Virus record (IMG/VR): IMGVR_UViG_3300022752_000015
Location: 1-64,000 of that record
Reading direction: 5' to 3' (one strand)
DNA: 64,000 bases
Shown: positions 14,971-46,664 of the stretch, piece by piece
How positions within the stretch are numbered: position 1 is the first letter of the stretch
Layout of the letters: the number at the start of each line of letters is the position of its first letter
Notes under the pieces: model-generated
The model's input: the letters and a program-made list of their open reading frames with translations, nothing else
Database searches by the model: none
What the model was told of the DNA's origin: nothing
Position numbers and translations under genes: made by a program

Positions 14971-15011
14971 TTTTTCGGGAACTTATTGTTTCTCCGGTTT
15001 TCTAATGCATC

Positions 15012-16301: not shown

Positions 16302-16310
16302 TTGTTGACT

Positions 16311-16505: not shown

Positions 16506-16506
16506 G

Positions 16507-17000: not shown

Positions 17001-17013
17001 GAATAAATCAGCA

Positions 17014-17424
17014 TCACTTCATGTTGAAAAGCGTCAGGCCTGACAGCGTGAGCAAGGTGGCCACGAGGTGCTTCAATTCGAACTCTTCGTTGAGGAAAGC
17101 TATCGACAGCACGGTCGTGATGACAGGTGAGGCAGATATCATCACCGAAAGTGCTCCTGTCGTGTTCGATGATTTCAATAGCATCCCAAACATCACAGCA
17201 CCACAGATGTGCAGACACGTGGTGATCACTGCGTAGATCACGCCTTGTGAATCTATGGACGAGTGTTTGGGCGCAAAATTGTACCATGCCGGGACCAGTG
17301 CCAGATAAATGAAAGCAGAGATGATCTGCATGTGGTAAGGATGAATTTTATCGACAGATAATTTTCGAAAGAACGCAGACAATCCGAAAGACAAAATTGT
17401 TGCTGCGATCAGTATGCGGTTCAT
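17014..17424 (-). CDS. EamA/DMT-family small membrane transporter
   Basis: 4-5 TM helices; SPVITTVLSIAFLNE..L motif. Confidence 0.8.
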   Translation of the reverse strand: MNRILIAATILSFGLSAFFRKLSVDKIHPYHMQIISAFIYLALVPAWYNFAPKHSSIDSQGVIYAVITTCLHICGAVMFGMLLKSSNTTGALSVMISASPVITTVLSIAFLNEEFELKHLVATLLTLSGLTLFNMK

Positions 17425-17431
17425 TGGATTC

Positions 17432-17677
17432 TTATATTAACACATTTTTTAGATAATTTTCGTCAGAAGCAAGAGTTAACTCATAATCATAAAATTGGTA
17501 CATCTTGCCTTCAGGTGTCAAGACGTCGCATATCATACGTTTATAGTCAGCCACACGCTGCTCTTCCTTGTAAACATTTAACACCACGAAGACAGAATCA
17601 TTCCAATGCGGGAGGATGTTGTCATATCCAAACCACATAGGATCTATTCTGACGAGGTCTCCTAACTTTAATTTCAC
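17432..17677 (-). CDS. KOW/SH3-like mini-protein
   Basis: KLGDLVRI...VVLNV...DVLTPEG. Confidence 0.75.
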   Translation of the reverse strand: MKLKLGDLVRIDPMWFGYDNILPHWNDSVFVVLNVYKEEQRVADYKRMICDVLTPEGKMYQFYDYELTLASDENYLKNVLI

Positions 17678-17681
17678 TGCT

Positions 17682-17924
17682 CTATATTTTTTCTAAGATT
17701 GCTGTTTTTGTCCATCCTGTCGTTCCGTCTGACAGCATTAAAAAAATGTTGTGTTGCCTTAAGTACACCACAAGCATTATGTCACCAGGTCGTATTATGC
17801 TCGTTACATCTAGAGAAGAGTCTTCGTAGTCTGGGCCTGCCCATAGAACATATCCCATCTTGAACGATGGATTGTCATTTTTGAATATGACTAGATCGCC
17901 GATCTCGATGGGATCGTGACACAC
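17682..17924 (-). CDS. KOW/SH3-like mini-protein
   Basis: IGDLVIF...GW...LEKI. Confidence 0.7.
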   Translation of the reverse strand: MCHDPIEIGDLVIFKNDNPSFKMGYVLWAGPDYEDSSLDVTSIIRPGDIMLVVYLRQHNIFLMLSDGTTGWTKTAILEKI

Positions 17925-17966
17925 ATAAATTAAGTATTTATCGAATATCGATTTTCATCGAAAAAT

Positions 17967-18197
17967 TTAGTGTAAAGTCTCTTTAGCAAACGTATAAGGA
18001 GCAGTAGACACTAGAGGTGAAATCGTAGTTCCATCGTATACCCAGGGAACATGTGGAGCTGCATCATCATGATTTTTGTTTAAAAGTCTAACAACATCAT
18101 GGATGTAATCCAATTTGGAACTTATTTCAAAAACGTCCACGGCGGTGCCATGCTTGTCGACGACAAAGATAAAAGGAAGCGGAACGACTATTTGCAA
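17967..18197 (-). CDS. hypothetical protein
   Basis: ORF in the coupled minus-strand run. Confidence 0.55.
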   Translation of the reverse strand: MQIVVPLPFIFVVDKHGTAVDVFEISSKLDYIHDVVRLLNKNHDDAAPHVPWVYDGTTISPLVSTAPYTFAKETLH

Positions 18198-20965: not shown

Positions 20966-22972
20966 ATGGCAAGAACATTCGTTCAGCAATCACAGATCAG
21001 TGGTTCATTAACATTTAACGATGCGATGGAAGCAGGCTCCGCGCTTGCTGGCAAGCAGACACTCGTAGGCGACCTCGACGCACTCCGCTCGCAGATCAAC
21101 AAGATCGTCGGCGGTGAGCGCTGGTACGATGCACTCAGCGGTTCACAAAACCTCGCAGACATCTACGCAGCATTGCAGGTAACTGGGGCTGATGCAAGCT
21201 TCCAGGGCGCAATGGACGTCGCTGGTGTGGCAGATTTTGATTCAGCAGTCTTCATGGCTTCTGATCTCGGAGTTTCTGGTTCGCTCGTTGTAGCAGGTCT
21301 TGCAGACCTCAACGGCGCACTTGAAGTAGCCGGAGTAGCTGACTTCGCTTCTGCAGCCTACATGGCTTCGGATCTTGGCGTCAGCGGCTCGCTCACAGTT
21401 GCAGGCCTCTCTGACCTCAACGGCGCCCTCGAGGTTGCTGGTGTGGCAGACTTCGCTTCAGCAGTCTACGCGGCTTCTGACCTCGGTGTCAGCGGATCAA
21501 TCACGGTTGCAGGACCTGCAACAATGAATGATGGCCTCACCGTAACAGGCGATCGTCTCGAAGTAACAGGTTCCATGGGCATCACCGGTGCAGTCGACTT
21601 CGACAGCACGCTCAACGTCGATGGCGTTGCAGACTTCAAGGCAGACGTCTATATGGCAGCTGCTCTCGGCGTCTCAGGTTCTGCATCTGTAGCAGGAGCA
21701 CTCGACGCAGGTTCACTCGAAGTTGCAGGTCTCTCTGACCTCAACGGTGCACTTGAAGTAGCTGGTGTTGCAGACTTCACATCTGACGTCTACATGGCAG
21801 CAGCCCTCGGTGTAAGCGGTTCGCTCACAGTTGCCCAAGCAGCAACGCTCTCTAATGGCCTCACGGTCAATGGAGCAGCTGCTGACTTCAATGCTGACGT
21901 AACAGCAAACAAGATCAGCATCGATGGCGATGCTGCTATGCACCTCTACATCGTTGATGCAGATGGTTCTATCAAGGATGAAGCTGCACTTTGGTTCGAC
22001 GGAACCAAGCTCTACGTGACCGGCGCTCTTGAGATCTCAGATGACCTCAAGGTCGGTGGAAACGACATCATCGACGGTTCCGACGCAACAGTGATCACAT
22101 TCAAGTCGATCAACAGCGTCGCCTCCAGCGTCGAAGTTGCAAACAACATGGAAGTCAAGGGCGACATGTTCTATGCCGTCAGCGCTTCTTTCTCAGGAGA
22201 CGTCACAGTCCAAGGTGATCTCACGATCCAGGGCTCGATGACATACATCGACACCGAGAACCTCAAGGTGAAGGATGCACTCATCCACCTCAACACAGGC
22301 GGAAACTCTAACCTCTCTCCACGTGGCCTTGTGCTCCATGGCGACCAGGCATATGACGATCTCGCCTTCGGCGCAAAGCCTGCTTCTGGTGACTTCGTCC
22401 TCGCAAAGGAAGTCTCTGACGCAGACGTCGACGCAGGAAACAGCGACGTATTCGCTAACGCGAAGCTCGCAGCAATGTGGATGTCTGAGATCAAGCTCGG
22501 TGGCATCGAAGGATCGCTCAGCGGTTCATTCGTGGCAACAGCAGCTGGTGCAGAACTCAGCTCAACAGCAGCACTCTCAGTCGCAGCAGCAGACGACATG
22601 ACCCTCGGTGCCAACGGCGAAGAAATCGGTCTCATGTCATCCGCCGAGAAGGGCGACTTCGACACGAACTTCGATGCAACGACGATCGTCGGCGCTCTCA
22701 ACGAGCTCTTCGACATGATCGGCGGTGGTTCTGCAGCTAAGGGTGACCTCAGCGTGGCAAACGTCGCAGGTAACACACTCACCTTCAGCTCGATCGGCAC
22801 ACTCACGGCAGCAGAACACAAGTTGGTCGACGTTTACCTCAACGGCGTCCTTCTCTCTCCAAGCCGCGATCTCTCCGGTCTCACAACGACAACTGTCGAC
22901 CTCGACTCTGCAATCGCCAGCGGCCTCATGGCTGATGACGTTATCACAGTCGTGATCCGCAGCGCAGTCTGA
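20966..22972 (+). CDS. virion fibre/structural protein with beta-helix-type repeats
   Basis: 36-aa tandem repeats (ASDLGVSGSLxVAGLxDLNGALEVAGVADFASAxYx) with 6-aa sub-period; C-terminal VYLNGVLL; strong codon bias. Confidence 0.7.
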   Translation: MARTFVQQSQISGSLTFNDAMEAGSALAGKQTLVGDLDALRSQINKIVGGERWYDALSGSQNLADIYAALQVTGADASFQGAMDVAGVADFDSAVFMASDLGVSGSLVVAGLADLNGALEVAGVADFASAAYMASDLGVSGSLTVAGLSDLNGALEVAGVADFASAVYAASDLGVSGSITVAGPATMNDGLTVTGDRLEVTGSMGITGAVDFDSTLNVDGVADFKADVYMAAALGVSGSASVAGALDAGSLEVAGLSDLNGALEVAGVADFTSDVYMAAALGVSGSLTVAQAATLSNGLTVNGAAADFNADVTANKISIDGDAAMHLYIVDADGSIKDEAALWFDGTKLYVTGALEISDDLKVGGNDIIDGSDATVITFKSINSVASSVEVANNMEVKGDMFYAVSASFSGDVTVQGDLTIQGSMTYIDTENLKVKDALIHLNTGGNSNLSPRGLVLHGDQAYDDLAFGAKPASGDFVLAKEVSDADVDAGNSDVFANAKLAAMWMSEIKLGGIEGSLSGSFVATAAGAELSSTAALSVAAADDMTLGANGEEIGLMSSAEKGDFDTNFDATTIVGALNELFDMIGGGSAAKGDLSVANVAGNTLTFSSIGTLTAAEHKLVDVYLNGVLLSPSRDLSGLTTTTVDLDSAIASGLMADDVITVVIRSAV

Positions 22973-23867: not shown

Positions 23868-24800
23868 TCACAAATTCTTGCAACACCTGAATCCTTGCTG
23901 GTAAAAGGTATGTCCAGGACCATGATTGCGAGTGGCAGGACGGCATCTTGTTCTAACAGTCCCCCAATACCCTCCTTTGAGAACTGAAGAGTAAGGATAC
24001 TGACTCTTTATCGTTCCGACAGTCCATTCATCTACGGACCCATTCATATCCTCAACGCCGAAAAAAGAGGCACATTGAGGTGCAGACCCGCTGCGGTGGC
24101 CCTGCCACAATCGCTTTAACTCTCGTGAACATTCTTGTGACCCACGCCGGGACAGGAATTTTTGTGAATATCTCTTCCATGGATTGTCCAAGTTACATTC
24201 TTGAGAATTACGTGTATAACCGTAAGGGAAAGGAGTGGCCTCCTCACCTTCGCAGGCAAAGGTCCATTCATCCTCGGCACATAGACGTTTACCGACGGAT
24301 TCACATAACTTTTGAGATTCGCCCCACGTGATCATGACCCATGGGTATGCACCCTTCTTGTTGGGCCATTCGTACTTATCAATGCAGAACGACATCGGTT
24401 TGCGAGGAAAGCGGTTCGATACTTCAAGCCATTTATCACGATCAAAAGACGCGCAACGTTCGGGGTACTTCCTCTCTATCCACTTCGTGCATGTGGTCTT
24501 CTGTAGAGACTCAATAGAGTTGTTGTTCCAACTTCCTAATCCACCATCATCTAACATGGTTCCTGAAACAAGAAGCATGTCTTCAGGACATCCTGAATCT
24601 GAGATGGGTAATGGATTTAAATCGTATGAAATTGCCTCATACGACCACCAGACCTTATTAAAAAAACCTGGAGAGATATGTGTCGATTGGCGGATCGACA
24701 GTATCTCTCCAGAAAGGAGATATGCTATGGCTAGTAGCATATTATTAAGTATACTACTGCTGAGGACACATGTTAAAACATTGCGCGTAACAAACGTCAC
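23868..24800 (-). CDS. FGE-sulfatase (SUMF1/EgtB/PvdO) fold protein, myxobacterial type
   Basis: FCIDKYEWPN, GKRLCAEDEWTFACEG, FPYG, DMNGSVDEW, KGGYW, GFRCC. Confidence 0.85.
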   Translation of the reverse strand: MTFVTRNVLTCVLSSSILNNMLLAIAYLLSGEILSIRQSTHISPGFFNKVWWSYEAISYDLNPLPISDSGCPEDMLLVSGTMLDDGGLGSWNNNSIESLQKTTCTKWIERKYPERCASFDRDKWLEVSNRFPRKPMSFCIDKYEWPNKKGAYPWVMITWGESQKLCESVGKRLCAEDEWTFACEGEEATPFPYGYTRNSQECNLDNPWKRYSQKFLSRRGSQECSRELKRLWQGHRSGSAPQCASFFGVEDMNGSVDEWTVGTIKSQYPYSSVLKGGYWGTVRTRCRPATRNHGPGHTFYQQGFRCCKNL

Positions 24801-27947: not shown

Positions 27948-28772
27948 TCAACCCCACAAACTTTCAAATGGTTTCACAAACTTTTGCCAAGATCCTTCTT
28001 TGGTGATCGAATGAAATCCCATCTCAGTAAAAGCTTCCTTGACGACGTTCCAATCCTGCACAGGCGAGGTAGAAGTCATTTTTGTCGCCTCGGCCTCAGA
28101 CCACGTCTGAAAAGAGATGAGATCGTAATTACGTTGGAATGTCTCAGCCTTGGTTGGATCTAACAAAAATTCGGTCAAAAGCTCCGGATCGCAGGCTAAC
28201 TTCTCCGCCGTCTTGTCACCAACGCCTGGGATACCAGGAATGTTGTCGGATGAATCGCCTCGAAGCGCCTTCCAGGTGACATAAGGATGATCAGGAGAAT
28301 TCACGAAAATCTTTTTGACCGGATTATACAGGGAAATATGCGGGAATTCTTGTAGGGCTTGAATGAAGTCAGTGTCTGTCGACACGACGATCCATGGTAC
28401 TGCAGTGGATGAAGTACGAATGAGATTGTAGATTGTATCATCGGCCTCGGAGGTGGGATGGCGGACGAGGGAGACCGGGAAGTAGGACGAAAGTAGTTGT
28501 ACAATGCGATCCTTCTGCTTGAAGAACTTCATGAGTTCCTCGTGACGGGGATCGGTCTCCTCCACAATTCGATTGGCCTTGTATTCTGTCATCGCAGCAT
28601 GGCGATGGACCGGACGACCTTCAAGCGCCAAGTAAACTCGATTAGGTTTGAATTGATCGACGAGTGCCCTGAACTGACGAAAGAAGTTGTAAATGACAGC
28701 GTGCTCGCCAGCGGTAAATCCACTGCGAGCACGATGGGCTGCGTTCATGAAGTCGATGCAGAGGATGGTCAT
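27948..28772 (-). CDS. 5'-3' exonuclease / flap endonuclease (T4 RNase H / PolI N-terminal family)
   Basis: IDFMN, EADD, STDTDF, GDSSDNIPGIPGVGDKTA. Confidence 0.92.
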   Translation of the reverse strand: MTILCIDFMNAAHRARSGFTAGEHAVIYNFFRQFRALVDQFKPNRVYLALEGRPVHRHAAMTEYKANRIVEETDPRHEELMKFFKQKDRIVQLLSSYFPVSLVRHPTSEADDTIYNLIRTSSTAVPWIVVSTDTDFIQALQEFPHISLYNPVKKIFVNSPDHPYVTWKALRGDSSDNIPGIPGVGDKTAEKLACDPELLTEFLLDPTKAETFQRNYDLISFQTWSEAEATKMTSTSPVQDWNVVKEAFTEMGFHSITKEGSWQKFVKPFESLWG

Positions 28773-28779
28773 GAGGACC

Positions 28780-28808
28780 ATCATACCACGTAAATGATGT
28801 TATTGCAC
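28780..28808 (-). promoter_or_regulatory. sigma70-like promoter GTGCAA-N17-TATGAT, ATG 7 nt downstream
   Basis: same family as the early promoters. Confidence 0.6.
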
Positions 28809-29324: not shown

Positions 29325-30068
29325 TCACGCAAGCAATTGTTCAATAATTTGTGTTGTGTGTTCAGGCCCGGTGGTTTCTATGCACTGAACACCTGTGGTT
29401 TTCACCGCGTAGTCATTTCCTCCTGGGAACAATGCATCTCCAATGAATAACATATCTTCCTTGGCGAAACCTAGGTGTTTCTCGATCTGAGAAATACCGT
29501 ATGCCTTGTCGATACCTTTTCTCGTCACATCAATGGAGGTCGATCCGCCTGCTCTGATGTCGAATTCAGGTATCAGCTGTAACAATTTTTCGATGAGGAT
29601 CAATCTCTTCGAAAAAGTTGGATCCCACTTTTTCTTCTCCGCAACGGGAGCGAGCTGACCCATCGCCGAGAAAGTGACCTGCGTGCCACGGTTCTCGATT
29701 TGATCTCCCCAAAATCTCTTTGGCATGCTAACTCCTGGATCTGCCAAGACTTGTTTGAAAGCTGACATGATCTTTTTTACCTCTACGTCTGTGAGGTCTT
29801 CGCAGTAGACCTGCGACCACTTTTTTCCGTCATGATTGTTGTAGAAACTTGTACCTGATGTCGGGAATAGGTGTAAACGACATGACAGTTCAGAAGTCAA
29901 CCCAAGTTGATTAACTAGTTGCGACTCGAATTGTGGCCATGCACCTCCTGAAATGACAGCAACATCGTAAGAAGCGAGCAAACGCCGCAAGACACCAGAC
30001 ATATCTGATGTTATTCGTGACTTGCTTTCTGCCAACGTACCGTCTAAATCAAAAATGATTATTTTCAT
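29325..30068 (-). CDS. HAD-IIB hydrolase, phosphomannomutase-like
   Basis: DLDGTL, ENRGTQVTFS, GGSTSIDV, FIGDALFPGGND. Confidence 0.85.
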   Translation of the reverse strand: MKIIIFDLDGTLAESKSRITSDMSGVLRRLLASYDVAVISGGAWPQFESQLVNQLGLTSELSCRLHLFPTSGTSFYNNHDGKKWSQVYCEDLTDVEVKKIMSAFKQVLADPGVSMPKRFWGDQIENRGTQVTFSAMGQLAPVAEKKKWDPTFSKRLILIEKLLQLIPEFDIRAGGSTSIDVTRKGIDKAYGISQIEKHLGFAKEDMLFIGDALFPGGNDYAVKTTGVQCIETTGPEHTTQIIEQLLA

Positions 30069-30100
30069 GACGGAATTAAATAGGCGAGAGTTCGCTAAAA

Positions 30101-30682
30101 TCAGCTACGAATGTATTTCTTGATGACATGTCGACCAGTTCTCTCCTGTGGCGGGACAAAGTCCATCTCAAGAAGGTCAAAGAAATCCTGTTCTTCAGGA
30201 ATCCACAGCTGTTCGCCGGTTGGCATCGTCGGCATGCAGTCGGTCATGCGGCCACCACCAGAGAGCTTCTTCCATCTTGAAAAGATTCCAGGAGTGAAGC
30301 CGTTGAAGGAATTGCCGTCAGGACCCGCACCTGAGCCAGTTCGCATGAGAAAAAGTCCACCCCAGTTCTCAGGAGAAGCCATGAAGAGATCAAGGTTCAT
30401 ACCTTCAGCCAAACGAACTCGTAGGTATTTTGCGGCTGGTTTAGGAGACCATGGAACAACACCTGGCACGCCTGGTTTGATGTGTTGACCCACATCTGAT
30501 AACAAAGAAAGCAAAAGATCTCGTTGCGTAGAGACCGCCACGATCTCGATGTCGCCTACAACTTCTTTTTGGCGACGGATCGATCCTGCGATCTCGCCTC
30601 GATCAAGTGAAGGCATGACGTGATTCAGTACGGAACTTGCGATGGTGTTTGCTTCAAGCAGGTCGATCTTGCCGATACCCAT
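30101..30682 (-). CDS. minimal X-family DNA polymerase (palm and thumb only)
   Basis: AGSIRR...GDIEIV, DLF, RTGS, EEQDFF...PPQER. Confidence 0.8.
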   Translation of the reverse strand: MGIGKIDLLEANTIASSVLNHVMPSLDRGEIAGSIRRQKEVVGDIEIVAVSTQRDLLLSLLSDVGQHIKPGVPGVVPWSPKPAAKYLRVRLAEGMNLDLFMASPENWGGLFLMRTGSGAGPDGNSFNGFTPGIFSRWKKLSGGGRMTDCMPTMPTGEQLWIPEEQDFFDLLEMDFVPPQERTGRHVIKKYIRS

Positions 30683-30886: not shown

Positions 30887-31143
30887 CGTTTGATCCTCTT
30901 CGTAGGAATGGTTCGATAAGCAGCAAGTGGAACCATCTTTAACGCTTTGATAGACATCTCAGCCGTTGCAAACCATTCGTCAAGAGATTCTTGATCGGAT
31001 ATTTCTCCTGAGGCGACTTTTTGAGAGATCAAATCTTGAAGAGACTGTCTCACTTCTTCCTTTTTCATATAAGAAGCCGAAGCGGCTACTCTTGATTCCA
31101 TAATAAAATCGAAAATTAACCGCTTCAGCTTATTCTTTGTCAT
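30883..31143 (-). CDS. hypothetical protein with N-terminal LKRLI helix
   Basis: MTKNKLKRLIFDFIME. Confidence 0.65.
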   Translation of the reverse strand: MTKNKLKRLIFDFIMESRVAASASYMKKEEVRQSLQDLISQKVASGEISDQESLDEWFATAEMSIKALKMVPLAAYRTIPTKRIKR

Positions 31144-31152
31144 AAGTTTTGA

Positions 31153-31404
31153 CTAATATCTATCAATCAAATTATTAGATACCTTTGCTAATATTTGAAT
31201 TAAATCTTCAACTTCTGTTATCGTGGCATTTATTTTTGTCTCAGCAGCAATAACAGAAAGAGGGACCATGCCATTTTGACCTAATCCCTTCATTCTCCAA
31301 TTAGATAAGGTGCCAGCAATAATCTCAAGGTCGCCCTTGATATTAAATAACATAACACCTAGTTCGTTCGGTGTCAGGTCGCGCATAACTACGCCTCCTG
31401 ACAA
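31153..31404 (-). CDS. hypothetical protein
   Basis: ORF in the minus-strand run. Confidence 0.55.
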   Translation of the reverse strand: MSGGVVMRDLTPNELGVMLFNIKGDLEIIAGTLSNWRMKGLGQNGMVPLSVIAAETKINATITEVEDLIQILAKVSNNLIDRY

Positions 31405-31431
31405 TAAATAAAAATTTAACTGAGATTTTTT

Positions 31432-32676
31432 TTAAAATTGTTCTTCTTCGGTAGAACCATGCAACGCCAAAGTTGAAGAATTGCCGGCGGAGATAACCTG
31501 AGACACAGCATCGAAATAACCCGTCCCAACCTCTCGTTGGTGCTTCGTGGCCGTGTAGCCGATTTTTTCTGCATCAAATTCTGCCTGTTGTAGTTTTGAA
31601 TAAGCCGCCATGCCATGATCCTTATATCCATGAGCTAATTGATACATAGAATGGTTGAGGGTATGAAATCCTGCCAAGGTAACAAACTGAAACTTATAGC
31701 CCATGGCTCCTAGCTCTCTTTGAAACTTGGCGATAGTCAAGTCGTCCAGATTCTTCTTCCAGTTAAAAGAAGGTGAACAGTTGTAAGCGAGAGGTTTTCC
31801 TGGAAATTTCGCGTGGATAGCTTCGGCAAATCGTTTTGCTTGATCAAGATCAGGAGTCGATGTCTCCATCCAAAGTAAATCGGCATATGGAGCATACGCT
31901 AGTCCACGGGCGACTGACCTCTCAAGTCCTGTTCTACACAGATAATGAAAACCCTCTGGAGTTCTTTCTTTCGTCGCTTCGATATAATTGCGATCGTAAG
32001 GATCAACATCGCTGGTGATAAGATTTGCAGAATCAGCGTCTGTCCTGGCAATGATCACCGTGGGAACACCCATAACGTCTGCAGCGAGGCGGGCTGCCGT
32101 GAGAGTTCTTACGAATTGCGAAGTTGGAACAAGAACTTTGCCGCCCATGTGACCGCATTTCTTTTCAGAAGCTAACTGATCTTCAAAATGAACTCCAGCT
32201 GCACCAGCTTCAATCATGGCTTTAGTAAGTTCAAAAACGTTTAGAGGACCTCCAAATCCTGCCTCGGCGTCGGCAACAATCGGAGCAAACCAATCAGTTC
32301 CTGATTTGCCTTCGGAGTTATCAATTTGATCGGCTCTCTGCAAGGCATTATTGATTCTGCGAACAACGGTCGGGACGCTGTTGACAGGATAAAGGCTTTG
32401 GTCAGGATACATTTCTCCTGAAAGATTGGCATCAGCAGCAACTTGCCAGCCAGAAAGATAAATAGCTTTAAGTCCAGCCTTGACTTGTTGCATGGCTTGA
32501 TTACCTGTTAAAGCTCCGAGTGCAGCAACATAAGGTTCAGTATGGAGAAGCCTCCATAGTTTTTGAGAACCAACATTAGCTAGTGTGTGTTCGATTTTTA
32601 ATGAGCCTTGAAGCTTTCTAACATCTGCTTCTGAATAATTTCGAATGATTCCATCGAATCTTGCTTCCATTATCAT
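31432..32676 (-). CDS. aceA: isocitrate lyase
   Basis: [58 protein letters not shown]. Confidence 0.97.
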
Positions 32677-32681
32677 TTCCT

Positions 32682-33101
32682 TTATTCTTCGTTTACGTTG
32701 TTGGATAATTTCAAATTTGCAACTTTTCCATCAGGAAGAACCACCACAGCTTTTTCTTCTCGCTGCTGCAACGGATCAATTATAGGAGAATGAACTTCAG
32801 AACGTGGATACCACTCTTCGGCCTTTAAAGCAGAAGAATCTATGATGTTATTCACGGTATTCATCACACGATGAGTGAGATCTCTACGTAAGTCTTCTAT
32901 GTCTTCATAGAGCTCTCCGTCAACATCAGATAAAGAAATTGTTCTTGCGTTTTTCCCAACCTTCGCAATATACGAAATGGATTCTCCTGAGACTGTTCTT
33001 TTTATTATCTCTTCTACAATTTGTAGAGGATAAATTTTCGTTTCTTTGTTGGTTAAGACGTAAAGAATCTGCCCAACTCTATAAGAACGTGATGTCATCA
33101 T
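32682..33101 (-). CDS. hypothetical protein with KOW-like N-terminus
   Basis: YRVGQILYV. Confidence 0.65.
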
Positions 33102-33111
33102 TCCCTCTTAG

Positions 33112-33483
33112 CTACTCATCATCTGCATCGTCTTCTGAATCAGGTGCTGGTTCAGAGGATTGATCGTAATCAGAAGCAACTTCAAAGACTCCTAACTCAG
33201 GAGGAGCTGTCACAGTGATTATAAAGTCTGGAGATTCTTCTTCCAGTGGAACACTGCCTTCTTTACAAAGATTCACAATTTTATTCCACAGCTTCGTTTC
33301 TACGATTTGCCTTCCTTGCCCAATCGCAAGAGATTGGCTCACTGTTGTTTTTAAATCAACAGGCAAAGAAATACTAAAAAGATCCCTTAGATGGATCAGC
33401 TCAGCAAGCGATAATTTTAAGGTAAAAGTCTTTTTTGGTTTCAGCAAAGCTTCTCTAGAGTTATCCATTGTTTTTTCCTTCAA
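33112..33483 (-). CDS. hypothetical protein
   Basis: ORF with acidic tail. Confidence 0.65.
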   Translation of the reverse strand: MKEKTMDNSREALLKPKKTFTLKLSLAELIHLRDLFSISLPVDLKTTVSQSLAIGQGRQIVETKLWNKIVNLCKEGSVPLEEESPDFIITVTAPPELGVFEVASDYDQSSEPAPDSEDDADDE

Positions 33484-33776
33484 GTTGATTTTTCTACGCC
33501 CGTCAATGCCTCAAGAAATAGATCAAACGTATCTTTATGCGCAACTGCTTGTTGGATCTTGACGACCTTAAGAGCAGATTGCAAAGTTTTCATATCTAGC
33601 TTTTCAGAGTACTCTTCAATGATCTCTTTTCGATCTCCTTTTAAGAGCTCTATCTCATTATCAATAGATTCGATCTTGTGGATAAACTCTTTAACTAGAG
33701 TGCGCAGAGAGTTAATCTCATCTGGCTGCATCGTTTCTACGTTGTAATTTTTTTGAGAAGCATTTTTTTTAGACAT
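33480..33776 (-). CDS. GapR/DUF2312/T4 DsbA-like dsDNA-binding protein
   Basis: LVKEFIHKIESIDNEIELLKGDRKEIIEEY...LDMKTL helical pattern. Confidence 0.6.
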   Translation of the reverse strand: MSKKNASQKNYNVETMQPDEINSLRTLVKEFIHKIESIDNEIELLKGDRKEIIEEYSEKLDMKTLQSALKVVKIQQAVAHKDTFDLFLEALTGVEKST

Positions 33777-33782
33777 ACAATG

Positions 33783-33811
33783 ATTATAATCTAAAAAAAA
33801 TCCTTGTTCAA
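33783..33811 (-). promoter_or_regulatory. sigma70 promoter TTGAAC-N17-TATAAT, leaderless ATG 6 nt downstream
   Basis: near-consensus hexamers. Confidence 0.7.
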
Positions 33812-33815
33812 TCAA

Positions 33816-34709
33816 TTATTCTTTGGCGCTGATGCCGATCATCGCAGCAATTTTCTTTATTTCTTCAGAGTATCTGGCGGGTAATCCTTTTTTAGACATT
33901 ATATCAGAAGTTGAAATCCCTTTTTCCTTCATCTGACCAACTATCTTATCTCTTTCTTGCTTCAAAGTTTTGATTGAAGTCATGAAAATTTGATGTTTAC
34001 CAGCTTCTAAAATCTTTTCTTCCGCTTGCTTTTTCTCTGCTTCAGGTTTTTCCGACAGCTCAGCTGACATCTTGTCTATTGTCTCTTTCGGTGCATTCAG
34101 CTGTTGCAAGTTCTTTGCAGATTTAACTTTTGAAAGATCATTTTTGATCTTACCGAAATATCTATCGACGGCTGCATGAGCTTTTTCGACCAGCTCAGCA
34201 GGAACCTGCGGTAATTTTTGCTTTTTTCCTGCGTCTTCCTCACGCTCTAACAAGACAGAGTTACTTTTTCTTACATTTTCCAGCGCGGCTTTTGCCGTCA
34301 TCACGGCCGCTGGGTTATATAAAAAACCGATTGCGACTAAATCGCTAGCCAGCAAAGCTTTTATACCGGCCGATCTTGCACCTTCATACTCACTTCTTAT
34401 CTTCGATATTTCATTGTTGTACGCGTCTTTGGCGGCTTGATAATTCGGCTCCCAAGCGCCAGCTGTCAAGAGACCTAATCCTCCGCTAAGAGACACGCGC
34501 ACGAGCCTTTTTGCTCCAGAGAATAGTTCTTTTGCTCTACCTTTCAGGATCTTAAAAATGTCAGTAACAGGGTCTACAAACGCTGTCTTTATGGCCGTCC
34601 CACCAAAGGTACTGCCACCTGACATGTAGGATGACGAATAGTCACCTGACATTTCTTCTGCTAAAATTCGTCTAACGTACTCTCTTAATAATTTATTTTC
34701 TTGCATCAC
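33816..34709 (-). CDS. hypothetical protein with N-terminal LLREYVRRIL helix
   Basis: 297-aa ORF. Confidence 0.75.
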   Translation of the reverse strand: MMQENKLLREYVRRILAEEMSGDYSSSYMSGGSTFGGTAIKTAFVDPVTDIFKILKGRAKELFSGAKRLVRVSLSGGLGLLTAGAWEPNYQAAKDAYNNEISKIRSEYEGARSAGIKALLASDLVAIGFLYNPAAVMTAKAALENVRKSNSVLLEREEDAGKKQKLPQVPAELVEKAHAAVDRYFGKIKNDLSKVKSAKNLQQLNAPKETIDKMSAELSEKPEAEKKQAEEKILEAGKHQIFMTSIKTLKQERDKIVGQMKEKGISTSDIMSKKGLPARYSEEIKKIAAMIGISAKE

Positions 34710-34941
34710 GACTCTTAATTATCAGTTTAACGTTAGTTAATTTTTCCCATTTTTCCACAATCTTACATTCAAATTCATTTAACGTCTGTTGCTTGGTCAG
34801 CGGATCTCTAGTAGAAAAAAACTTCCTATCAGATGGAGGCAAGGATTTTAAAATTTCCTTTTTTATAGTCTGCCAATCTTTCACGTTCATAGCATAACTA
34901 CGTATTTCTAACAAAATTTGCTCTAGCTTCTTTTCATCCAT
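34693..34941 (-). CDS. hypothetical protein
   Basis: coupled ORF. Confidence 0.6.
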   Translation of the reverse strand: MDEKKLEQILLEIRSYAMNVKDWQTIKKEILKSLPPSDRKFFSTRDPLTKQQTLNEFECKIVEKWEKLTNVKLIIKSRDARK

Positions 34942-35353
34942 TTCCCATCTCCAACATCAAAAGAGCTGCATCGAAGATAGGATGCTGATACGAGCACAAC
35001 GGAGGCAACTTTTTTATATCGAACCATCTTGCTTCTACGACTTCTGAAGCTTCATGACCGCTGCTCGGCTCACGATCGCATGTTTGTATTGCTAGGAAAG
35101 GTATCACAATTTTTTTATATTTTTTTCTTGTTATGAACACGTGGGGTAATTGCGTGATTATTTTTATGTCAATTCCAGCCTCTTCGAGGGTTTCTCTAAC
35201 AGCTGTCTCTACGTATGTTTCGCCATACTCCATGTGGCCTTTCGGAATTCCCCAAGATTCATCATTTGTAGACTGCTTCACCAATAAGATTTGCGTGCAA
35301 GTAGGTTGCTTTCTATAAACTACAGCTCCGCATGAAAATCTTGTTGGTACCAT
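34934..35353 (-). CDS. Nudix hydrolase
   Basis: PKGHMEYGETYVETAVRETLEEAGI Nudix box. Confidence 0.9.
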   Translation of the reverse strand: MVPTRFSCGAVVYRKQPTCTQILLVKQSTNDESWGIPKGHMEYGETYVETAVRETLEEAGIDIKIITQLPHVFITRKKYKKIVIPFLAIQTCDREPSSGHEASEVVEARWFDIKKLPPLCSYQHPIFDAALLMLEMGNG

Positions 35354-38005: not shown

Positions 38006-38372
38006 ACAGCGGATTATACGCTATGTCTTTACAAATTAAATCCGCATATCTGCTGTAAGCTTTGTCTAGCTCTGTCGTTTTGTTCTTTTCTAGAGTTTCT
38101 AGTTCTACAAAAACTACTTTTTTGTCTATTCTTAGTCTAGCATGATGACCAGACTCTGACTCGTAACTTAATAGAGATGTTACAAATCTGTTTCTATCTT
38201 GTAGGCTTTCAAAGAAAAACTTCTTTACATAAGAGTTTCCGTCATCAAGAAAGGACCATTTTTCAATCGCTATGATTGGTTTATCAACATTCTTTACAAC
38301 CTTAACCGGGGCATCGACGACCGATCTAAAAGAATCGCGTATAAAATTTCGGTTGATTTCTACAAGCTTCAT
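37992..38372 (-). CDS. pterin-4a-carbinolamine dehydratase-like protein
   Basis: W...YVKKFFF...RFV...GHHA...TELD..Y...D pattern. Confidence 0.6.
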   Translation of the reverse strand: MKLVEINRNFIRDSFRSVVDAPVKVVKNVDKPIIAIEKWSFLDDGNSYVKKFFFESLQDRNRFVTSLLSYESESGHHARLRIDKKVVFVELETLEKNKTTELDKAYSRYADLICKDIAYNPLYERE

Positions 38373-39130
38373 AGTTCAATTATACCACCAACGACGGCTT
38401 CGTTCAAAAAGCTGGAACCATGTGTGTAGACTTGTTTGTTACGAGTAACTATACAAGAACCGCCTTTGAATGTCAAATCTCTTTCTTTTCCAACGCGATT
38501 AGAAACGATGATATTTGCATTCGTTTGTTCGGCAAGTTCTACCCATGTATGATCCGGATGACCTACATTCCCACCCCAGTTTGTCAATAATGCTATAGTA
38601 TCAACCGACCCTTTTCTATAGAATCTTTGATCTTCTTTGTAAAACTTGTAACTTTCTCTATAGACATTCATAGCATCTCTACAGATCAAAGCGCCAAGTC
38701 GACCAGCTCTTGTTATAACAACGGGATTAAATGCTTCTGAAGACTCTGCCCACAAATAATCGTTAGCCCAAAGATTGTGTTTTTGAAAATTAGCGCTAAC
38801 GCCATTTGGACCTACGACTACAGCTGAATTATACAGCTTTCCTTCATTCAATTCTACGTATCCGACCACGATGTGACAATTGTACTGTTTAGCTATTGGC
38901 AGAAATGCTTCAGTTTGGTAACCATCTCTAGTTTGCGCACATTGAGAAGCTTCTTGTTTATTGCGCAATACATAACCGCTGATGCACAATTCTGGTAGTA
39001 CCACTACGCTCGCTCCTTTTGCTGCGGCTTCATGAGCAAGATAACGAGCAGTAGAAAGATTCTTTTGTACGTCAAGAATCTTCGGTTCGAATTGTACTGC
39101 AGCGGCTATGGTAGCATTAAACATTTTCAA
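38369..39130 (-). CDS. carbon-nitrogen hydrolase (nitrilase family)
   Basis: LPELCISGY, YNSAVVV, FQKHNL, GALICRD, SNRVG; E-K-C triad. Confidence 0.9.
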   Translation of the reverse strand: MKMFNATIAAAVQFEPKILDVQKNLSTARYLAHEAAAKGASVVVLPELCISGYVLRNKQEASQCAQTRDGYQTEAFLPIAKQYNCHIVVGYVELNEGKLYNSAVVVGPNGVSANFQKHNLWANDYLWAESSEAFNPVVITRAGRLGALICRDAMNVYRESYKFYKEDQRFYRKGSVDTIALLTNWGGNVGHPDHTWVELAEQTNANIIVSNRVGKERDLTFKGGSCIVTRNKQVYTHGSSFLNEAVVGGIIEL

Positions 39131-41969: not shown

Positions 41970-42508
41970 GCACCACCTCCAGATGGTCCCATAGCTCTAT
42001 CGGCTGGCGGTGCTGGGAATTTCGAAAATTTTTCTTCTGATTGATTTTTGCCAACTTCTATATCGTACTGTTCTTCTAATATTTCTTTAAATGATTGTAT
42101 GACGCTCGAATCATAACTCTTTGATAAGAAATTTATGGCTCTACGAACCACAGTGTCTCTTACCTCTAAAAGAGAATCGTAGTTATCAATTAAACGAACT
42201 ACACTGTTTGTAAAGGATTCTAGATCTATATCATCGATTGTGAGATCAGATGGAACTTCTTGAACTTTATCATCTTTTTCTTCTTTGTCATCTTCTGCTT
42301 CTAACAGAAAATTTCTCGTCATAATTTTGAAATCAAATCCTTCTTTTTTAACAGAAGTCGCTTCTTTTTCATATTTGGCGAAGTAAGAGTCTATTTGCGA
42401 ATCTAAAGAGTCTTCCGATTCTACTTTAGAAGATTTGCTTTTCTCCTCGAGCAAATGAGATACGCTATCTTTAATAATCTTTTTCAACTCTTTTAAATGA
42501 ATTTTCAT
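41966..42508 (-). CDS. hypothetical protein with N-terminal LKKIIKD helix
   Basis: MKIHLKELKKIIKDSVS. Confidence 0.7.
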   Translation of the reverse strand: MKIHLKELKKIIKDSVSHLLEEKSKSSKVESEDSLDSQIDSYFAKYEKEATSVKKEGFDFKIMTRNFLLEAEDDKEEKDDKVQEVPSDLTIDDIDLESFTNSVVRLIDNYDSLLEVRDTVVRRAINFLSKSYDSSVIQSFKEILEEQYDIEVGKNQSEEKFSKFPAPPADRAMGPSGGGA

Positions 42509-43233
42509 TTTAATACCTGCGCAATTTGCTCGGCTTTCTTAACTCTCTCTTCAACAACATTCCAATTAATTTCTCTCATTTGAGAAACTATATAGCTCTG
42601 TTTGTCGTTCAAGTAATCGCGATAAGCATGTTCCCAAACGTCTAGAACGATCACTGGATATATACCCAACATAACATTAGCGTCATGACTTCCGACGAAC
42701 GTATTCACATATCGTTGCAAAAACATGTGATATCCGCAAACAGCCCAACCAACTCCGGCTGAGTTTGAACATGCTATGAAATCTCTTTGCCAGTCTTCAA
42801 ACGTGCCGAAATCTCGTTCCAATCGTAGATAAGACAAAGAATCCATTGTGATCTCAGAATGAGGATCAAAACAATTCGAGAAGTATAACTCGTGAAGCCA
42901 AATCGCGTTCAGGTTATAAACCTCATCTTTTTTCAGAGATTTATACGATGAGTGACGAGGATTAGCGTCTCCACGTTTTGAAGTGTCAAGTTCAGCAGAT
43001 ACTTTGTTGAATGATTCAACGTAGCCCTTGTAGAGATCATAATGAGCATCTTTGGTTTTTTGAGTAACAAACTCAGTTACTTGTTTAAAAACCTTGGGTT
43101 CAGCAACGTAAGATTCATTTATCTGATCTGCTTGAGGCATTAACCCAATAGATGGCGCTTTTTTAGAAATGCTGTCCTTAACAGCTTTTTTTAATAACGA
43201 GTCTATTTTTTGAGGATCTATAAGCTTGTTCAT
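42505..43233 (-). CDS. Fe/Mn superoxide dismutase family protein with N-terminal extension
   Basis: AHYDLYKGYV, LHELYF, DFGTFEDW, GWAV, LDVWEHAY. Confidence 0.88.
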   Translation of the reverse strand: MNKLIDPQKIDSLLKKAVKDSISKKAPSIGLMPQADQINESYVAEPKVFKQVTEFVTQKTKDAHYDLYKGYVESFNKVSAELDTSKRGDANPRHSSYKSLKKDEVYNLNAIWLHELYFSNCFDPHSEITMDSLSYLRLERDFGTFEDWQRDFIACSNSAGVGWAVCGYHMFLQRYVNTFVGSHDANVMLGIYPVIVLDVWEHAYRDYLNDKQSYIVSQMREINWNVVEERVKKAEQIAQVLK

Positions 43234-44648: not shown

Positions 44649-45647
44649 TTATTTGTTAAAAAATTTATAGCCGTTAAATTCCGTTGATTTCAAAAGGTCT
44701 AACTTAAAGTTTTCAGAATCAACACCTTTTAACTTATTTGCTCTATGCGAAATTAAAATCTTGCACCAATCATTCCAATATTCAGAACCAGCATTGAGAT
44801 TAGAAGCCAACTGTTTTAATTCATCAATAGTCTGACAATTTCTGCACTTGGATTCTTGCTCCAAAATATATTCTAAAGGTAGTTTACCCTTTGGTAGCTT
44901 CGGCATTTCTAAACTAAAAAACTCTCGTTTTTTTAGAATTTCTTCTACCATTCCAAAATGCTTTTCATAAATATGCAAAGAATTGCTTACGTGAGTATAC
45001 TCACCAACGCTTATAGACCTGTTCAACCTATCCGATAATTGATTAGCCAACAACTCTTGAAACAACGTGAATGCAGGAACATCATACGCAATTCCTAAGA
45101 TGAGATCAGATGATCTCATAGAGACTATCATGTGAACCTGATCGTTACGCAAAAAAAACTGCAAAGACAAAGTGCAAGGAACGTCCTTTGAGGCTAGGAT
45201 AGAATCCTGAGGAGATCTAATATGAATGACGGCTCGGCGAGAATCTGGATCTGCCGTCAGTTCATTCAAGATGTAATCCCATTGTGTCCAAGAAGGATCG
45301 ATTTGACCAGCAATTCTTGAATGAGGATTAAAAATCCTGGCACCGTAAGCGCTGTTAGCTGTAGTGCCATCATCAGAAATGTTCTTCCAAAAAGAAGAAT
45401 AATTCGATATCCATTCAGTGGAATCGTTTCCAGAAAGATACCACAAAGACTCTGCAACAAAATATGATAAGCTAAAGTCTCTTTGCTCTACATACGGTAA
45501 TCTATCAAGAGGATTAGAAATCCTGAATGATACGCCCAACTTTTCTCTGATCTTCTGCCCTCGAGGAGAAGAAACAAAGTCAGGATGCTTGTAGACGTCT
45601 AGAAGCAGATCATAGTAGGCTTCAGTGAAGCTAGAAAAAACTTTCAT
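44649..45647 (-). CDS. thymidylate-synthase-family enzyme, probable dCMP hydroxymethylase/methylase
   Basis: AYGAR, DSRRAV, DVPCT, MRSSDLILGIAYD (Asp at the nucleotide-specificity site), SLHIY. Confidence 0.8.
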   Translation of the reverse strand: MKVFSSFTEAYYDLLLDVYKHPDFVSSPRGQKIREKLGVSFRISNPLDRLPYVEQRDFSLSYFVAESLWYLSGNDSTEWISNYSSFWKNISDDGTTANSAYGARIFNPHSRIAGQIDPSWTQWDYILNELTADPDSRRAVIHIRSPQDSILASKDVPCTLSLQFFLRNDQVHMIVSMRSSDLILGIAYDVPAFTLFQELLANQLSDRLNRSISVGEYTHVSNSLHIYEKHFGMVEEILKKREFFSLEMPKLPKGKLPLEYILEQESKCRNCQTIDELKQLASNLNAGSEYWNDWCKILISHRANKLKGVDSENFKLDLLKSTEFNGYKFFNK

Positions 45648-46624
45648 ATATTCTCTTTATCACTCAACGTTTTAATTAGTTCCCAATTGTCCTGATACCA
45701 CTGGATTGTTTTTTCCAATCCTTCCCAAAAATACACCAGGGGAGTGTAACCTAAAACTTCTTTTGTCCTAGAAATATCAGCTTGAGTGTGCATGACATCA
45801 CCAGGTCTCCAAGGAGCATCATGGTATTTCGCATCAGGAAATTTTTTCAACAAAAATTGCAAAATTTCTCTATTTGTTGTCCTGTCGCCACAAGCCACAT
45901 TTAAAGTTTCAGACTTTAATGGGAAATTTGCCTTTGCTGCTCTTACGCATGCATCGGCAACATTATCAACATAACACATGTCGCGAGATTGCGTTCCGTC
46001 TCCGTCAGAACGCATCAAAGTCCCCTTCATAATTGCATTGACCCACGCAGAAACCGCTGTGGAATAAGGAGAATTTCCTAACTGATTTGGACCAAAGACG
46101 TTAAAGAACCTTAGGCTGACTGAATCGAACCCATAAAGATCATAATACATCTTCAAATAATCTTCAATTATAGATTTTTGCAAAGCGTAAGGTGATTTAG
46201 GGTTCTTTACAGCATTAGGAGGAGTTGGTAGCTGGTCAGCACCTCCGTAAACAGATGACGAGGATGCAAAGACAAAACGTTTAATCTTTCCTCGACAAGC
46301 ATCAATCAATTTCATTGTTGCTGTCACGTTTGCGTTGTGAGATTCAAGAGGAAAATCGACGGAATAACTCACGCGCGGGACGGCAGCCAAGTGTATAACA
46401 ACATCATACAATCCAGACCTTATCTTTGCTAAGATTGTTTCGGAGTCAAAGCTGGCAATCGTAATGTTACGATCCAGCAGCGAGGGATCAACAAACGACA
46501 TGTGACCGTTTGACAGATCGTCAACGATGTCAAATTCTATATTTTCTGCCATTAATCTTTTTGCGACGTTACTGCCTATGAAGCCCGCACCACCCGTCAA
46601 TAAAATTCTCATATGATTATACAC
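45644..46624 (-). CDS. NAD-dependent NDP-sugar epimerase/dehydratase
   Basis: TGGAGFIG, ASSSSVYG, YALQK, LRFFNVFGP. Confidence 0.92.
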   Translation of the reverse strand: MYNHMRILLTGGAGFIGSNVAKRLMAENIEFDIVDDLSNGHMSFVDPSLLDRNITIASFDSETILAKIRSGLYDVVIHLAAVPRVSYSVDFPLESHNANVTATMKLIDACRGKIKRFVFASSSSVYGGADQLPTPPNAVKNPKSPYALQKSIIEDYLKMYYDLYGFDSVSLRFFNVFGPNQLGNSPYSTAVSAWVNAIMKGTLMRSDGDGTQSRDMCYVDNVADACVRAAKANFPLKSETLNVACGDRTTNREILQFLLKKFPDAKYHDAPWRPGDVMHTQADISRTKEVLGYTPLVYFWEGLEKTIQWYQDNWELIKTLSDKENI

Positions 46625-46664
46625 CTTTTTTAATTATAAACAAGCTTGTTTCATATTTACAATT

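What the first reader, a model, noticed from the sequence alone, without database searches (positions are those of the whole stretch)
31432..32676. Intact isocitrate lyase (glyoxylate shunt) carried by a phage
Seen: full AceA with catalytic KKCGH, its own SD, a slightly shortened N-terminus, embedded among phage hypothetical genes; no malate synthase in this window. Inference: an uncommon auxiliary metabolic gene that would conserve carbon from lipid or acetate for nucleotide and sugar synthesis. This fits a predatory or starving myxobacterial host.
Basis: partly seen in the sequence, partly recalled or inferred. Interest (0 to 1): 0.6.

Follow-up and report, generated by a model that had tools for sequence, protein, structure and literature searches.

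The report
Intact isocitrate lyase in a freshwater huge phage
A large freshwater phage really does carry a complete, strongly conserved isocitrate lyase gene without a malate synthase, but this is a documented habit of huge phages, and nothing points to a myxobacterial host.

Summary
Window 31432-32676 (minus strand) is a 414-aa frame, probably 412 aa from the second ATG at 32670. It scores 762 bits against NCBIfam's isocitrate lyase equivalog (cut-off 562). It keeps 148 of 149 columns that are near-invariant in 79 cellular enzymes, including KKCGH. The contig is a phage: terminase, T4-type portal, three tail sheath paralogs and a DnaE-type polymerase lie on a 212.8-kb IMG/VR record, 59% complete.

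The gene is not contamination. The same gene order recurs in seven other contigs, and contigs from independent runs cross both junctions. Among phage orthologues synonymous sites are saturated while dN stays at 0.06-0.16. Codon GC follows each phage.

It belongs to a clade with no cellular member among 185,579 species genomes (best 77% identity). All these viral enzymes lack the usual N-terminal segment.

Malate synthase is absent here and in a 97%-complete phage with a same-clade enzyme. A phage with a closer polymerase carries both genes side by side.

A 2025 preprint already reports 98 huge phages with this gene, the freshwater ones without malate synthase. The myxobacterial-host idea is unsupported: the phage has 41% GC and gene GC3 of 0.35, against 0.88-0.98 in Myxococcota. 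The physiological role is inferred, not shown.

The parts
31432..32676 (-). Isocitrate lyase (aceA-type) coding frame, 414 aa from the first ATG. The probable true start is the second ATG at 32670 (412 aa).
32677..32681 (-). Shine-Dalgarno-like AGGAA, 7 nt upstream of the ATG at 32670 and directly after the upstream gene's stop codon (32682-32684).
   Evidence: Read directly from the sequence.
32149..32163 (-). Codons of the catalytic loop K-K-C-G-H (residues 172-176).
   Evidence: All five residues are invariant in 79 cellular ICLs.
32682..33101 (-). 139-aa unnamed ORF that ends 5 nt before the ICL frame. It is conserved in the same position in related phage contigs.
   Evidence: 35-42% identity in L010, L011, L012, L015. 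No Pfam or PHROG match.
33112..33815 (-). Two small ORFs (123 and 111 aa) upstream that serve as synteny anchors. The second has a weak, sub-threshold GapR-like DNA-binding match.
29325..30682 (-). Downstream synteny anchors: a 193-aa unnamed ORF and a 247-aa HAD/phosphomannomutase-like hydrolase.
   Evidence: 69-89% identity in related contigs.
27948..28784 (-). 5'-3' exonuclease, a phage replication-module gene on the same strand.
34934..35353 (-). NUDIX hydrolase, upstream on the same strand.

Best explanation
The gene is a functional isocitrate lyase that has long been resident in the genome of a contractile-tailed huge freshwater phage.

Lineage. It belongs to a virus-associated ICL lineage that lacks the N-terminal segment of cellular enzymes and that occurs in unrelated huge-phage lineages.

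Placement. It sits in a long co-directional block of replication and nucleotide-metabolism genes, 5 nt behind the preceding ORF. It is therefore probably made together with those genes during infection (inferred).

Reaction. In the infected cell it should cleave isocitrate into succinate and glyoxylate. That diverts carbon away from the two CO2-releasing steps of the TCA cycle (inferred from family membership).

Dependence on the host. The phage carries no malate synthase or other recognisable glyoxylate-using enzyme. The fate of glyoxylate therefore rests on host enzymes, either malate synthase or conversion to glycine or glycerate (inferred).

The physiological benefit is a hypothesis. Candidates are carbon saving, succinate for respiration, and lower NADH and oxidative load.
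For: Enzyme identity and integrity.
- NF011645 scores 762 bits against a cut-off of 562.
- The best solved structure aligns end to end at E=4.7e-207.
- 148 of 149 near-invariant cellular columns are kept; the one change is F->Y at residue 231.
- The [21 protein letters not shown] and NCSPSFNW motifs and the C-terminal Q-F are all present.

Phage identity of the contig.
- DnaE-type polymerase, thymidylate synthase-like gene and ribonucleotide reductase.
- Three tail sheath paralogs, tape measure and baseplate wedge.
- Head-tail adaptor, DnaB helicase and UvsX-like recombinase.
- Large terminase and T4-type portal.
- The record is an IMG/VR virus record.

Not an assembly artefact.
- Gene order matches on both sides in L010, L011, L012, L015, L170, L177 and L178.
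- The identical protein lies on an independent 194-kb ENA contig.
- Contigs from other studies bridge both junctions.

Long residence under constraint.
- pS is at or above 0.75 (saturated) while dN is 0.06-0.16.
- The closest pair gives dN/dS of 0.117.
- GC3 runs from 0.23 to 0.65 and follows each phage's own GC.

Virus-only clade.
- Support is 99* and 98*.
- The best of 185,579 species genomes reaches 77% identity.
- Holding all short-N viral ICLs as one clade is not rejected: lnL is 20 higher, p-AU 0.83.

No partner enzyme in the 212.8 kb.
- PF01274, PF02826 and PF00464 are absent.
- The only PF00266 match is a DegT-type sugar aminotransferase.
Against: - No enzyme assay exists, and no expression data either. 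The two 'RNA' runs that hold fragments are probably DNA.
- The record is only 59% complete, so a malate synthase elsewhere in this genome is not excluded.
- The host is unknown, so whether it supplies malate synthase cannot be said.
- The effect of the missing N-terminal segment on assembly or regulation is untested.
- The single-clade test was defined after the tree had been seen.
Confidence: 0.78

Rival explanations
1. Host contamination or chimeric assembly: the gene belongs to a bacterium and was joined to phage DNA by the assembler.
For: The record is a linear metagenome contig of 59% estimated completeness. Its two ends look odd: low ORF density in the first 18 kb and a GC-rich repeat-laden last 9 kb.
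Against: The gene lies 31 kb inside the contig, between phage genes on both sides. The same order is seen in at least seven other contigs from other samples. Independent runs have contigs that cross both junctions. GC3 of 0.35 matches the phage.
Confidence: 0.02
2. A recent capture from a myxobacterial host, which would mark the host as a myxobacterium.
For: Myxococcota and a 'delta proteobacterium' MAG are among the best cellular matches at 75-77%. Their enzymes share the R-F-x-G-I start of the core and lack the L-x-x-x-W helix found in most other ICLs.
Against: - Chloroflexota, Acidobacteriota and Bacillota enzymes match equally well at 74-76%.
- The branching with the Myxococcota/Alphaproteobacteria clade is unresolved.
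- Synonymous sites are saturated even among the phage copies, so the capture is old.
- Phage GC is 41% and gene GC3 is 0.35, against GC3 of 0.88-0.98 in the Myxococcota genes.
- The phage occurs in lake and reservoir water metagenomes.
Confidence: 0.04
3. The enzyme is active but does not serve a glyoxylate shunt. One option is that it supplies glyoxylate (for glycine and purines) and succinate as a stand-alone branch, perhaps in a host that itself lacks ICL. Another is that it acts mainly as a methylisocitrate lyase in propionate handling.
For: - Malate synthase is absent here, in the syntenic 200-kb relative and in a 97%-complete 361-kb phage with a same-clade ICL.
- Freshwater huge phages are reported as ICL-only.
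- A lake-sediment study found viral aceA without host homologues.
- From my own knowledge, AceA-type enzymes such as M. tuberculosis ICL1 also cleave methylisocitrate.
Against: - No glyoxylate aminotransferase, reductase or SHMT is encoded.
- The KKCGH motif and the equivalog score are those of true ICLs, and the prpB models score far below their cut-offs.
- Phages with ICLs of the wider short-N group keep aceB next to aceA, so the enzyme type does work in a shunt.
Confidence: 0.15
4. A functionless passenger gene on its way to decay.
For: No direct evidence of expression was obtained.
Against: The frame is intact and 148 of 149 invariant columns are kept. dN/dS is 0.117 in the closest pair, and dN stays low while synonymous sites are saturated. 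More than 100 full-length relatives at 80-95% identity exist.
Confidence: 0.01

Closest known systems
Bacterial AceA-type isocitrate lyase (NCBIfam NF011645; solved examples 6lrp, 7cmx, M. tuberculosis ICL1 1f61, E. coli 1igw)
   Same: Same length class. Alignment runs end to end, with roughly 77% identity to 6lrp by inspection of the printed alignment (E=4.7e-207). All invariant motifs and the C-terminal tail are present.
   Different: It lacks the first 12-17 residues that precede the conserved core in cellular enzymes. It is encoded by a phage and has no aceB or aceK beside it.
Isocitrate lyase genes of huge phages in the Huge Phage Genome Collection (bioRxiv 10.1101/2025.02.27.640493)
   Same: A huge phage from freshwater with ICL and no malate synthase. 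That is the pattern the preprint describes: 98 ICL genes, 22 malate synthases, none of the latter in freshwater.
   Different: The passages I read give no phylogeny, N-terminal comparison or selection analysis. I could not check whether this very genome is in that collection; the supplement search was blank.
aceBA operon of the marine environmental viral genome TARA_ERS478052_N000008 (PMC5332604), and of IMG/VR records behind L037 and L038
   Same: A phage-borne ICL of the short-N type. The L038 record's DNA polymerase is 67% identical to this phage's, so it is a real relative.
   Different: In those phages malate synthase is adjacent to ICL. Here it is absent. The ICLs belong to a different sub-clade, 67-69% identical.
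Phage C48C1 (OQ984149.1, Kyanoviridae, complete 156-kb genome)
   Same: A deposited phage genome with a full-length ICL homologue (59.8% identity, 413 aa), also short at the N-terminus and without malate synthase.
   Different: It is a T4-like genome of another family. Its ICL is very divergent (long branch) and is annotated only as a hypothetical protein.

Membership tests
Isocitrate lyase (EC 4.1.3.1, AceA type) | Score above the curated cut-off of an equivalog-level family model | tested here: met
   NF011645 761.9 bits against 562. TIGR01346 579.5 bits against 275.9.
Isocitrate lyase (EC 4.1.3.1, AceA type) | Catalytic loop K-K-C-G-H with the general-base cysteine | tested here: met
   Residues 172-176. 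All five are invariant in 79 cellular ICLs.
Isocitrate lyase (EC 4.1.3.1, AceA type) | Metal- and substrate-binding motifs (S-G-W, D-x-E-A-G-F-G-G, [21 protein letters not shown]). The roles of these residues are recalled from the M. tuberculosis and E. coli structures, not tested here. | tested here: met
   All are present and identical to the cellular consensus. 148 of 149 near-invariant columns are kept.
Isocitrate lyase (EC 4.1.3.1, AceA type) | C-terminal tail that closes over the neighbouring subunit's active site | tested here: met
   The alignment with 6lrp runs to the last residue. The terminal Q-F is invariant.
Isocitrate lyase (EC 4.1.3.1, AceA type) | Full N-terminal segment as in cellular enzymes | tested here: not met
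   There are 10-12 residues before the anchor, against about 24-27. This segment varies in length and sequence among cellular clades, so it is not a catalytic requirement. The consequence is untested.
Isocitrate lyase (EC 4.1.3.1, AceA type) | Cleavage of isocitrate to succinate and glyoxylate | not testable with these tools
   Needs an enzyme assay or complementation.
Methylisocitrate lyase (PrpB) | Score above the prpB equivalog cut-off | tested here: not met
   TIGR02317 102 bits against 354. NF008455 88 bits against 353.
Complete phage-borne glyoxylate shunt (aceBA) | Malate synthase encoded with ICL | tested here: not met
   No PF01274 match in the 212.8-kb record, in the syntenic 200-kb relative or in the 97%-complete 361-kb phage. 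It is present next to ICL in the L037 and L038 records, and the control genomes ring. This record is 59% complete.
Tailed phage (Caudoviricetes, contractile tail) | Terminase, portal and tail sheath genes on the same contig | tested here: met
   Terminase_6N, Portal_T4 and tail sheath phrog_23 three times.

The most novel reading that the evidence does not exclude
One virus-specific lineage of N-terminally shortened isocitrate lyases arose from a single old capture. It has since moved among unrelated huge-phage lineages: the ICL tree disagrees with the polymerase and tail sheath similarities. In freshwater lineages it works without malate synthase, so the infected cell gains a stand-alone isocitrate-to-succinate-plus-glyoxylate branch, possibly in hosts that have no ICL of their own.
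Probability: 0.3. Interest if true: 0.5.

Novelty: new member of a known kind. Interest (0 to 1): 0.3.

Why it matters
Phage-borne glyoxylate-shunt genes have been counted in surveys, but I found no paper in which one was expressed or assayed. This gene is a clean candidate for such a test. It is intact, strongly constrained, widespread in lakes, and comes in a form that lacks both the cellular N-terminus and a malate synthase partner. Showing what an ICL alone does in an infected cell would say how huge phages rewire central carbon flow in nutrient-poor waters. As a discovery it is modest, because the pattern is already described.

Tried and rejected
1. TGA recoding as an explanation for the low ORF density in window 1-20 kb. 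Removing TGA opens frames, but the resulting ORFs overlap each other on both strands and none is long. I rejected this and used no other code anywhere else.
2. Host inference from the phage sigma factor. All 120 best relatives are unnamed metagenome proteins.
3. Host inference from isolated phages. The polymerase is at most 31% identical to any deposited phage. The best tail sheath matches are an uncultured 484-kb phage and Microcystis phage Mel-JY01, at 31-34% over part of the protein. This is too weak to name a host.
5. The supplementary tables of the huge-phage preprint held no ICL rows as text.
6. Expression. No RNA holder was found, and two 'RNA-Seq'-labelled runs hold only short contigs and are flagged as probably DNA.
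7. Rfam, tRNA and tandem-repeat scans of the window gave nothing relevant.
8. Glyoxylate-using partner genes were not found. The only aminotransferase is a DegT-type sugar enzyme. PrkA, seen near ICL in another phage, is absent here.
9. The promoter scan gave no more hits than shuffled sequence (16 against 18.9). The terminator scan gave more than shuffled (23 against 8.4), but no site could be tied to this gene.

I did not run the large representative protein search, structure prediction or complex prediction. Sequence evidence already settles the fold and family.

Full report
**1. What is at the coordinates**

Window 31432..32676 is an open frame of 414 codons on the minus strand.
- It matches Pfam ICL at E=1.8e-100.
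- It scores 761.9 bits against NCBIfam's equivalog model NF011645 'isocitrate lyase', whose cut-off is 562.
- The methylisocitrate lyase models score far below their cut-offs.
- The best solved structure, 6lrp, aligns from residue 5 to the last residue at E=4.7e-207.

I aligned the protein with 79 cellular ICLs taken from species-representative genomes. Of the 149 columns that are invariant or differ in a single sequence, it keeps 148. The one change is a conservative F->Y at residue 231.

The following are all identical to the cellular consensus:
- S-G-W (75-77)
- D-A-E-A-G-F-G-G (136-143)
- H-F-E-D-Q (163-167)
- K-K-C-G-H (172-176)
- A-R-T-D-A (210-214)
- N-C-S-P-S-F-N-W (299-306)
- T-L-A-G-F-H (333-338)
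- the terminal Q-F

The catalytic and ligand-binding roles of these motifs are recalled from the published M. tuberculosis and E. coli structures. I did not test them.

Upstream, the preceding ORF ends with TAA at 32682-32684. AGGAA follows at 32677-32681. That is 1 nt from the first ATG and 7 nt from the second ATG at 32670. The second ATG is therefore the likely start, giving 412 aa. This agrees with the alternative gene call and with relatives of 412-413 aa.

**2. Is it a phage, and is the gene really part of it**

The window is the first 64 kb of a 212,804-bp IMG/VR virus record. The record is linear, 59% complete by CheckV's estimate and 41% GC.

The record encodes:
- a DnaE-type polymerase, a thymidylate synthase-like protein and sugar-nucleotide enzymes
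- ribonucleotide reductase, three tandem tail sheath paralogs of about 1,020 aa and a tape measure-like protein
- a baseplate wedge
- a head-tail adaptor, a sheath stabiliser, DnaB helicase and a UvsX-like recombinase
- a T4-type large terminase, a T4-type portal and PhoH

Within the window the ICL lies in a long minus-strand block. From lower to higher coordinates the block holds:
- a 5'-3' exonuclease
- a phosphomannomutase-like HAD hydrolase
- small unnamed ORFs
- ICL
- more small ORFs
- NUDIX
- a CN-hydrolase
- Fe/Mn superoxide dismutase
- the thymidylate synthase-like gene
- the polymerase
- a GMP reductase/IMPDH-family protein

Several lines show that the gene is not an assembly artefact.
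- The flanking genes on both sides recur in the same order around ICL in IMG/VR contigs L010, L011 (200 kb), L012 and L015.
- They recur in a Lake-sample contig whose ICL NCBI names 'Chlamydiae bacterium MAG'. By its gene content that contig is plainly the same kind of phage.
- They recur in 278- and 282-kb contigs whose ICL is 92% identical.
- The identical protein sits on an independently assembled 194-kb ENA contig.
- The 5-kb stretch around the gene is held at half or more of its 31-mers by 17 runs from about 14 studies. Most are lake, reservoir or other freshwater metagenomes.
- Contigs of two of those runs cross both ends of the gene into the phage neighbours. X3 record 28 (15.7 kb) covers 30970-32537 and 32620-34500. 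X2 records 11 and 12 cross 31432 and 32676.

**3. Age and constraint**

Among the phage orthologues the proportion of synonymous differences is 0.75-0.85. That is saturated. dN is only 0.06-0.16. The closest pair (window against L177) gives dN 0.057, dS 0.489 and dN/dS 0.117.

GC3 of the gene ranges from 0.23 to 0.65 among these phages and follows the GC of each locus. It is 0.35 in the window. The Myxococcota genes have 0.88-0.98.

The gene has therefore been in phage genomes for a long time and is kept by selection.

**4. Relatives**

The word-index protein search found more than 100 proteins of 410-414 aa at 80-95% identity, on contigs of up to 371 kb.

In 185,579 species-representative genomes the best match is 77%. 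At 73-77% there are Myxococcota, Chloroflexota, Acidobacteriota, Bacillota, Verrucomicrobiota and Betaproteobacteria.

In trees the window protein falls in a well-supported clade made only of viral and metagenome sequences. Support is 99* with FastTree on 197 rows and 98* with IQ-TREE and a mixture model on 86 rows. Its position relative to a Myxococcota/Alphaproteobacteria clade and to other viral clades is unresolved. No donor can be named.

**5. The short N-terminus is a trait of viral ICLs**

All members of the window clade have 10-12 residues before the R-N-Y anchor. So do the L021, L026, L037 and L038 groups and phage C48C1, at 4-18. Most cellular enzymes have about 24-27, forming an I-x-x-L-x-x-x-W helix motif. 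The Myxococcota/Alphaproteobacteria enzymes have 20-35 residues of variable sequence.

I held all 32 short-N viral rows together as one clade. This gave a better likelihood than the free quick search, by 20 log units, and was not rejected (p-AU 0.83). This is compatible with one viral ICL lineage. The group was defined after the tree had been seen, so it is a lead and not a result.

A separate large group of viral-contig ICLs near Burkholderiales keeps the full N-terminus.

**6. Malate synthase and other partners**

PF01274 results:
- no match in this record
- no match in the syntenic 200-kb record of L011
- no match in the 361-kb record of L014, which is 97% complete, carries an ICL of the same clade at 85% and is classed by IMG/VR as a provirus
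- no match in phage C48C1
- present directly beside ICL in the records of L037 and L038

The L038 phage has a polymerase 67% identical to this phage's and a tail sheath 48% identical. The syntenic L011 phage has 44% and 60%. The L014 phage has 31% and no sheath match. ICL relationships therefore do not follow the phage backbone. That implies replacement or transfer between phages.

No glyoxylate reductase, SHMT or class-V aminotransferase is encoded. The one PF00266 hit is a DegT-type sugar aminotransferase in a glycosyltransferase cluster.

**7. Mechanism**

Shown:
- an intact, constrained ICL gene
- embedded in a phage replication and metabolism block
- with a ribosome-binding site
- with no intervening terminator or promoter that I could distinguish from chance

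Inferred:
- it is expressed with its neighbours
- it cleaves isocitrate to succinate and glyoxylate in the infected cell
- host enzymes dispose of the glyoxylate

Possible benefits, from general knowledge of the shunt and not tested here:
- saving carbon that would be lost as CO2
- feeding succinate to respiration
- lowering NADH production and oxidative load; the phage also carries a superoxide dismutase

**8. Comparison with what is known**

- Viral aceA and aceB were seen in Pacific Ocean viromes (PMC4053976).
- An aceBA operon was found in a 179-kb marine viral genome (PMC5332604).
- Viral aceA without host homologues was found in lake sediment (PMC12783922).
- A 2025 preprint reports 98 ICL genes in 98 huge phages, with malate synthase in only 22 and never in freshwater phages.
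- I found no paper in which a phage ICL was assayed.

The finding is therefore a new member of a described kind. What this analysis adds is the virus-only clade, the shared N-terminal shortening, the saturation of synonymous sites and the mismatch with the phage backbone.

**9. The host claim**

Nothing supports a myxobacterial host. The evidence is the GC and codon arguments above, the freshwater distribution and the unresolved tree. The host remains unknown. The nearest isolated phage by tail sheath is a Microcystis phage at 34% over part of the protein. That is too weak to use.

Noticed in passing
window 1-18000: Frames of 100 aa or more cover only 44-62% of this stretch, against 86-100% elsewhere in the genome. 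It has no tRNA, no Rfam match and no notable tandem repeats. Homologues among the fetched loci start only at about 14.7 kb. By my coordinate arithmetic, the independent 194-kb ENA contig of the same phage begins at about window position 14.2 kb, so this end may be variable or misjoined.
   Followed up: partly
genome 204000-212804 (L009 6000-14804), outside the window: GC rises from about 0.40 to 0.51-0.64. From about 207 kb on, the stretch is full of dispersed 40-110-bp repeats at 73-90% identity. Its ORFs from about 205.8 kb on have no Pfam match. It follows tRNA-Glu(TTC) at about 200.2 kb, an ATP-dependent ligase, a sigma-70-like factor and UvdE. By my arithmetic, the independent ENA contig ends before most of it.
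   Followed up: partly
genome 97885-107321 (L003 1885-11321), outside the window: Three tandem tail sheath paralogs of 1,015-1,022 aa each, about twice the usual sheath length. Related phages have two or three such copies.
   Followed up: partly
L173 13312-17960 (366-kb phage contig with a same-clade ICL): A DUF444 / SpoVR / PrkA gene triad lies 2-6 kb from ICL. In bacteria this is the stress and starvation kinase module yeaH-ycgB-yeaG. I recall, unverified, that E. coli YeaG has been linked to AceA phosphorylation. PrkA is absent from the window's own record.
   Followed up: partly
L170 (JGI Ga0194115_10000733) and L134 (Ectothiorhodospiraceae MAG contig): An ICL that NCBI names 'Chlamydiae bacterium MAG' sits on a contig with this phage's gene order. 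An ICL from an 'Ectothiorhodospiraceae' MAG is nested inside a viral clade and has the short N-terminus. Both look like phage contigs binned into bacterial MAGs.
   Followed up: partly
L175 7992-9233 (Phage C48C1, OQ984149.1 44175-45416): A complete 156-kb Kyanoviridae genome encodes a full-length ICL homologue (59.8% identity) that is annotated only as a hypothetical protein.
   Followed up: yes
window 32537-32620: Contigs of two other runs carry an 82-bp segment of the same length but diverged sequence inside the 5' part of the ICL gene, roughly codons 19-46. The flanks are near-identical (table 5). This suggests mosaic exchange between strains.
   Followed up: no
window 42505-43233, 56162-57229, 38369-39130, 23868-24800: Further host-like metabolic genes on the phage: an Fe/Mn superoxide dismutase C-domain behind a roughly 135-aa unmatched N-terminus, a GMP reductase/IMPDH-family protein, a carbon-nitrogen hydrolase and an FGE-sulfatase-domain protein.
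   Followed up: no
window 44649-50386 and 57828-60767; genome 138880-147235: A thymidylate synthase-like gene lies next to nucleotide-sugar epimerases and dehydratases, glycosyltransferase-like and cytidylyltransferase-like genes. Elsewhere there are two glycosyltransferases, a DegT aminotransferase and a GNAT. This set could serve DNA or virion glycosylation.
   Followed up: no
window 20966-22972: A 668-aa ORF of 55% GC with a sub-threshold bactofilin-like match and a 108-bp tandem repeat of 1.9 copies at 21305-21513. The same kind of gene lies at the matching position in L177 and L178.
   Followed up: no
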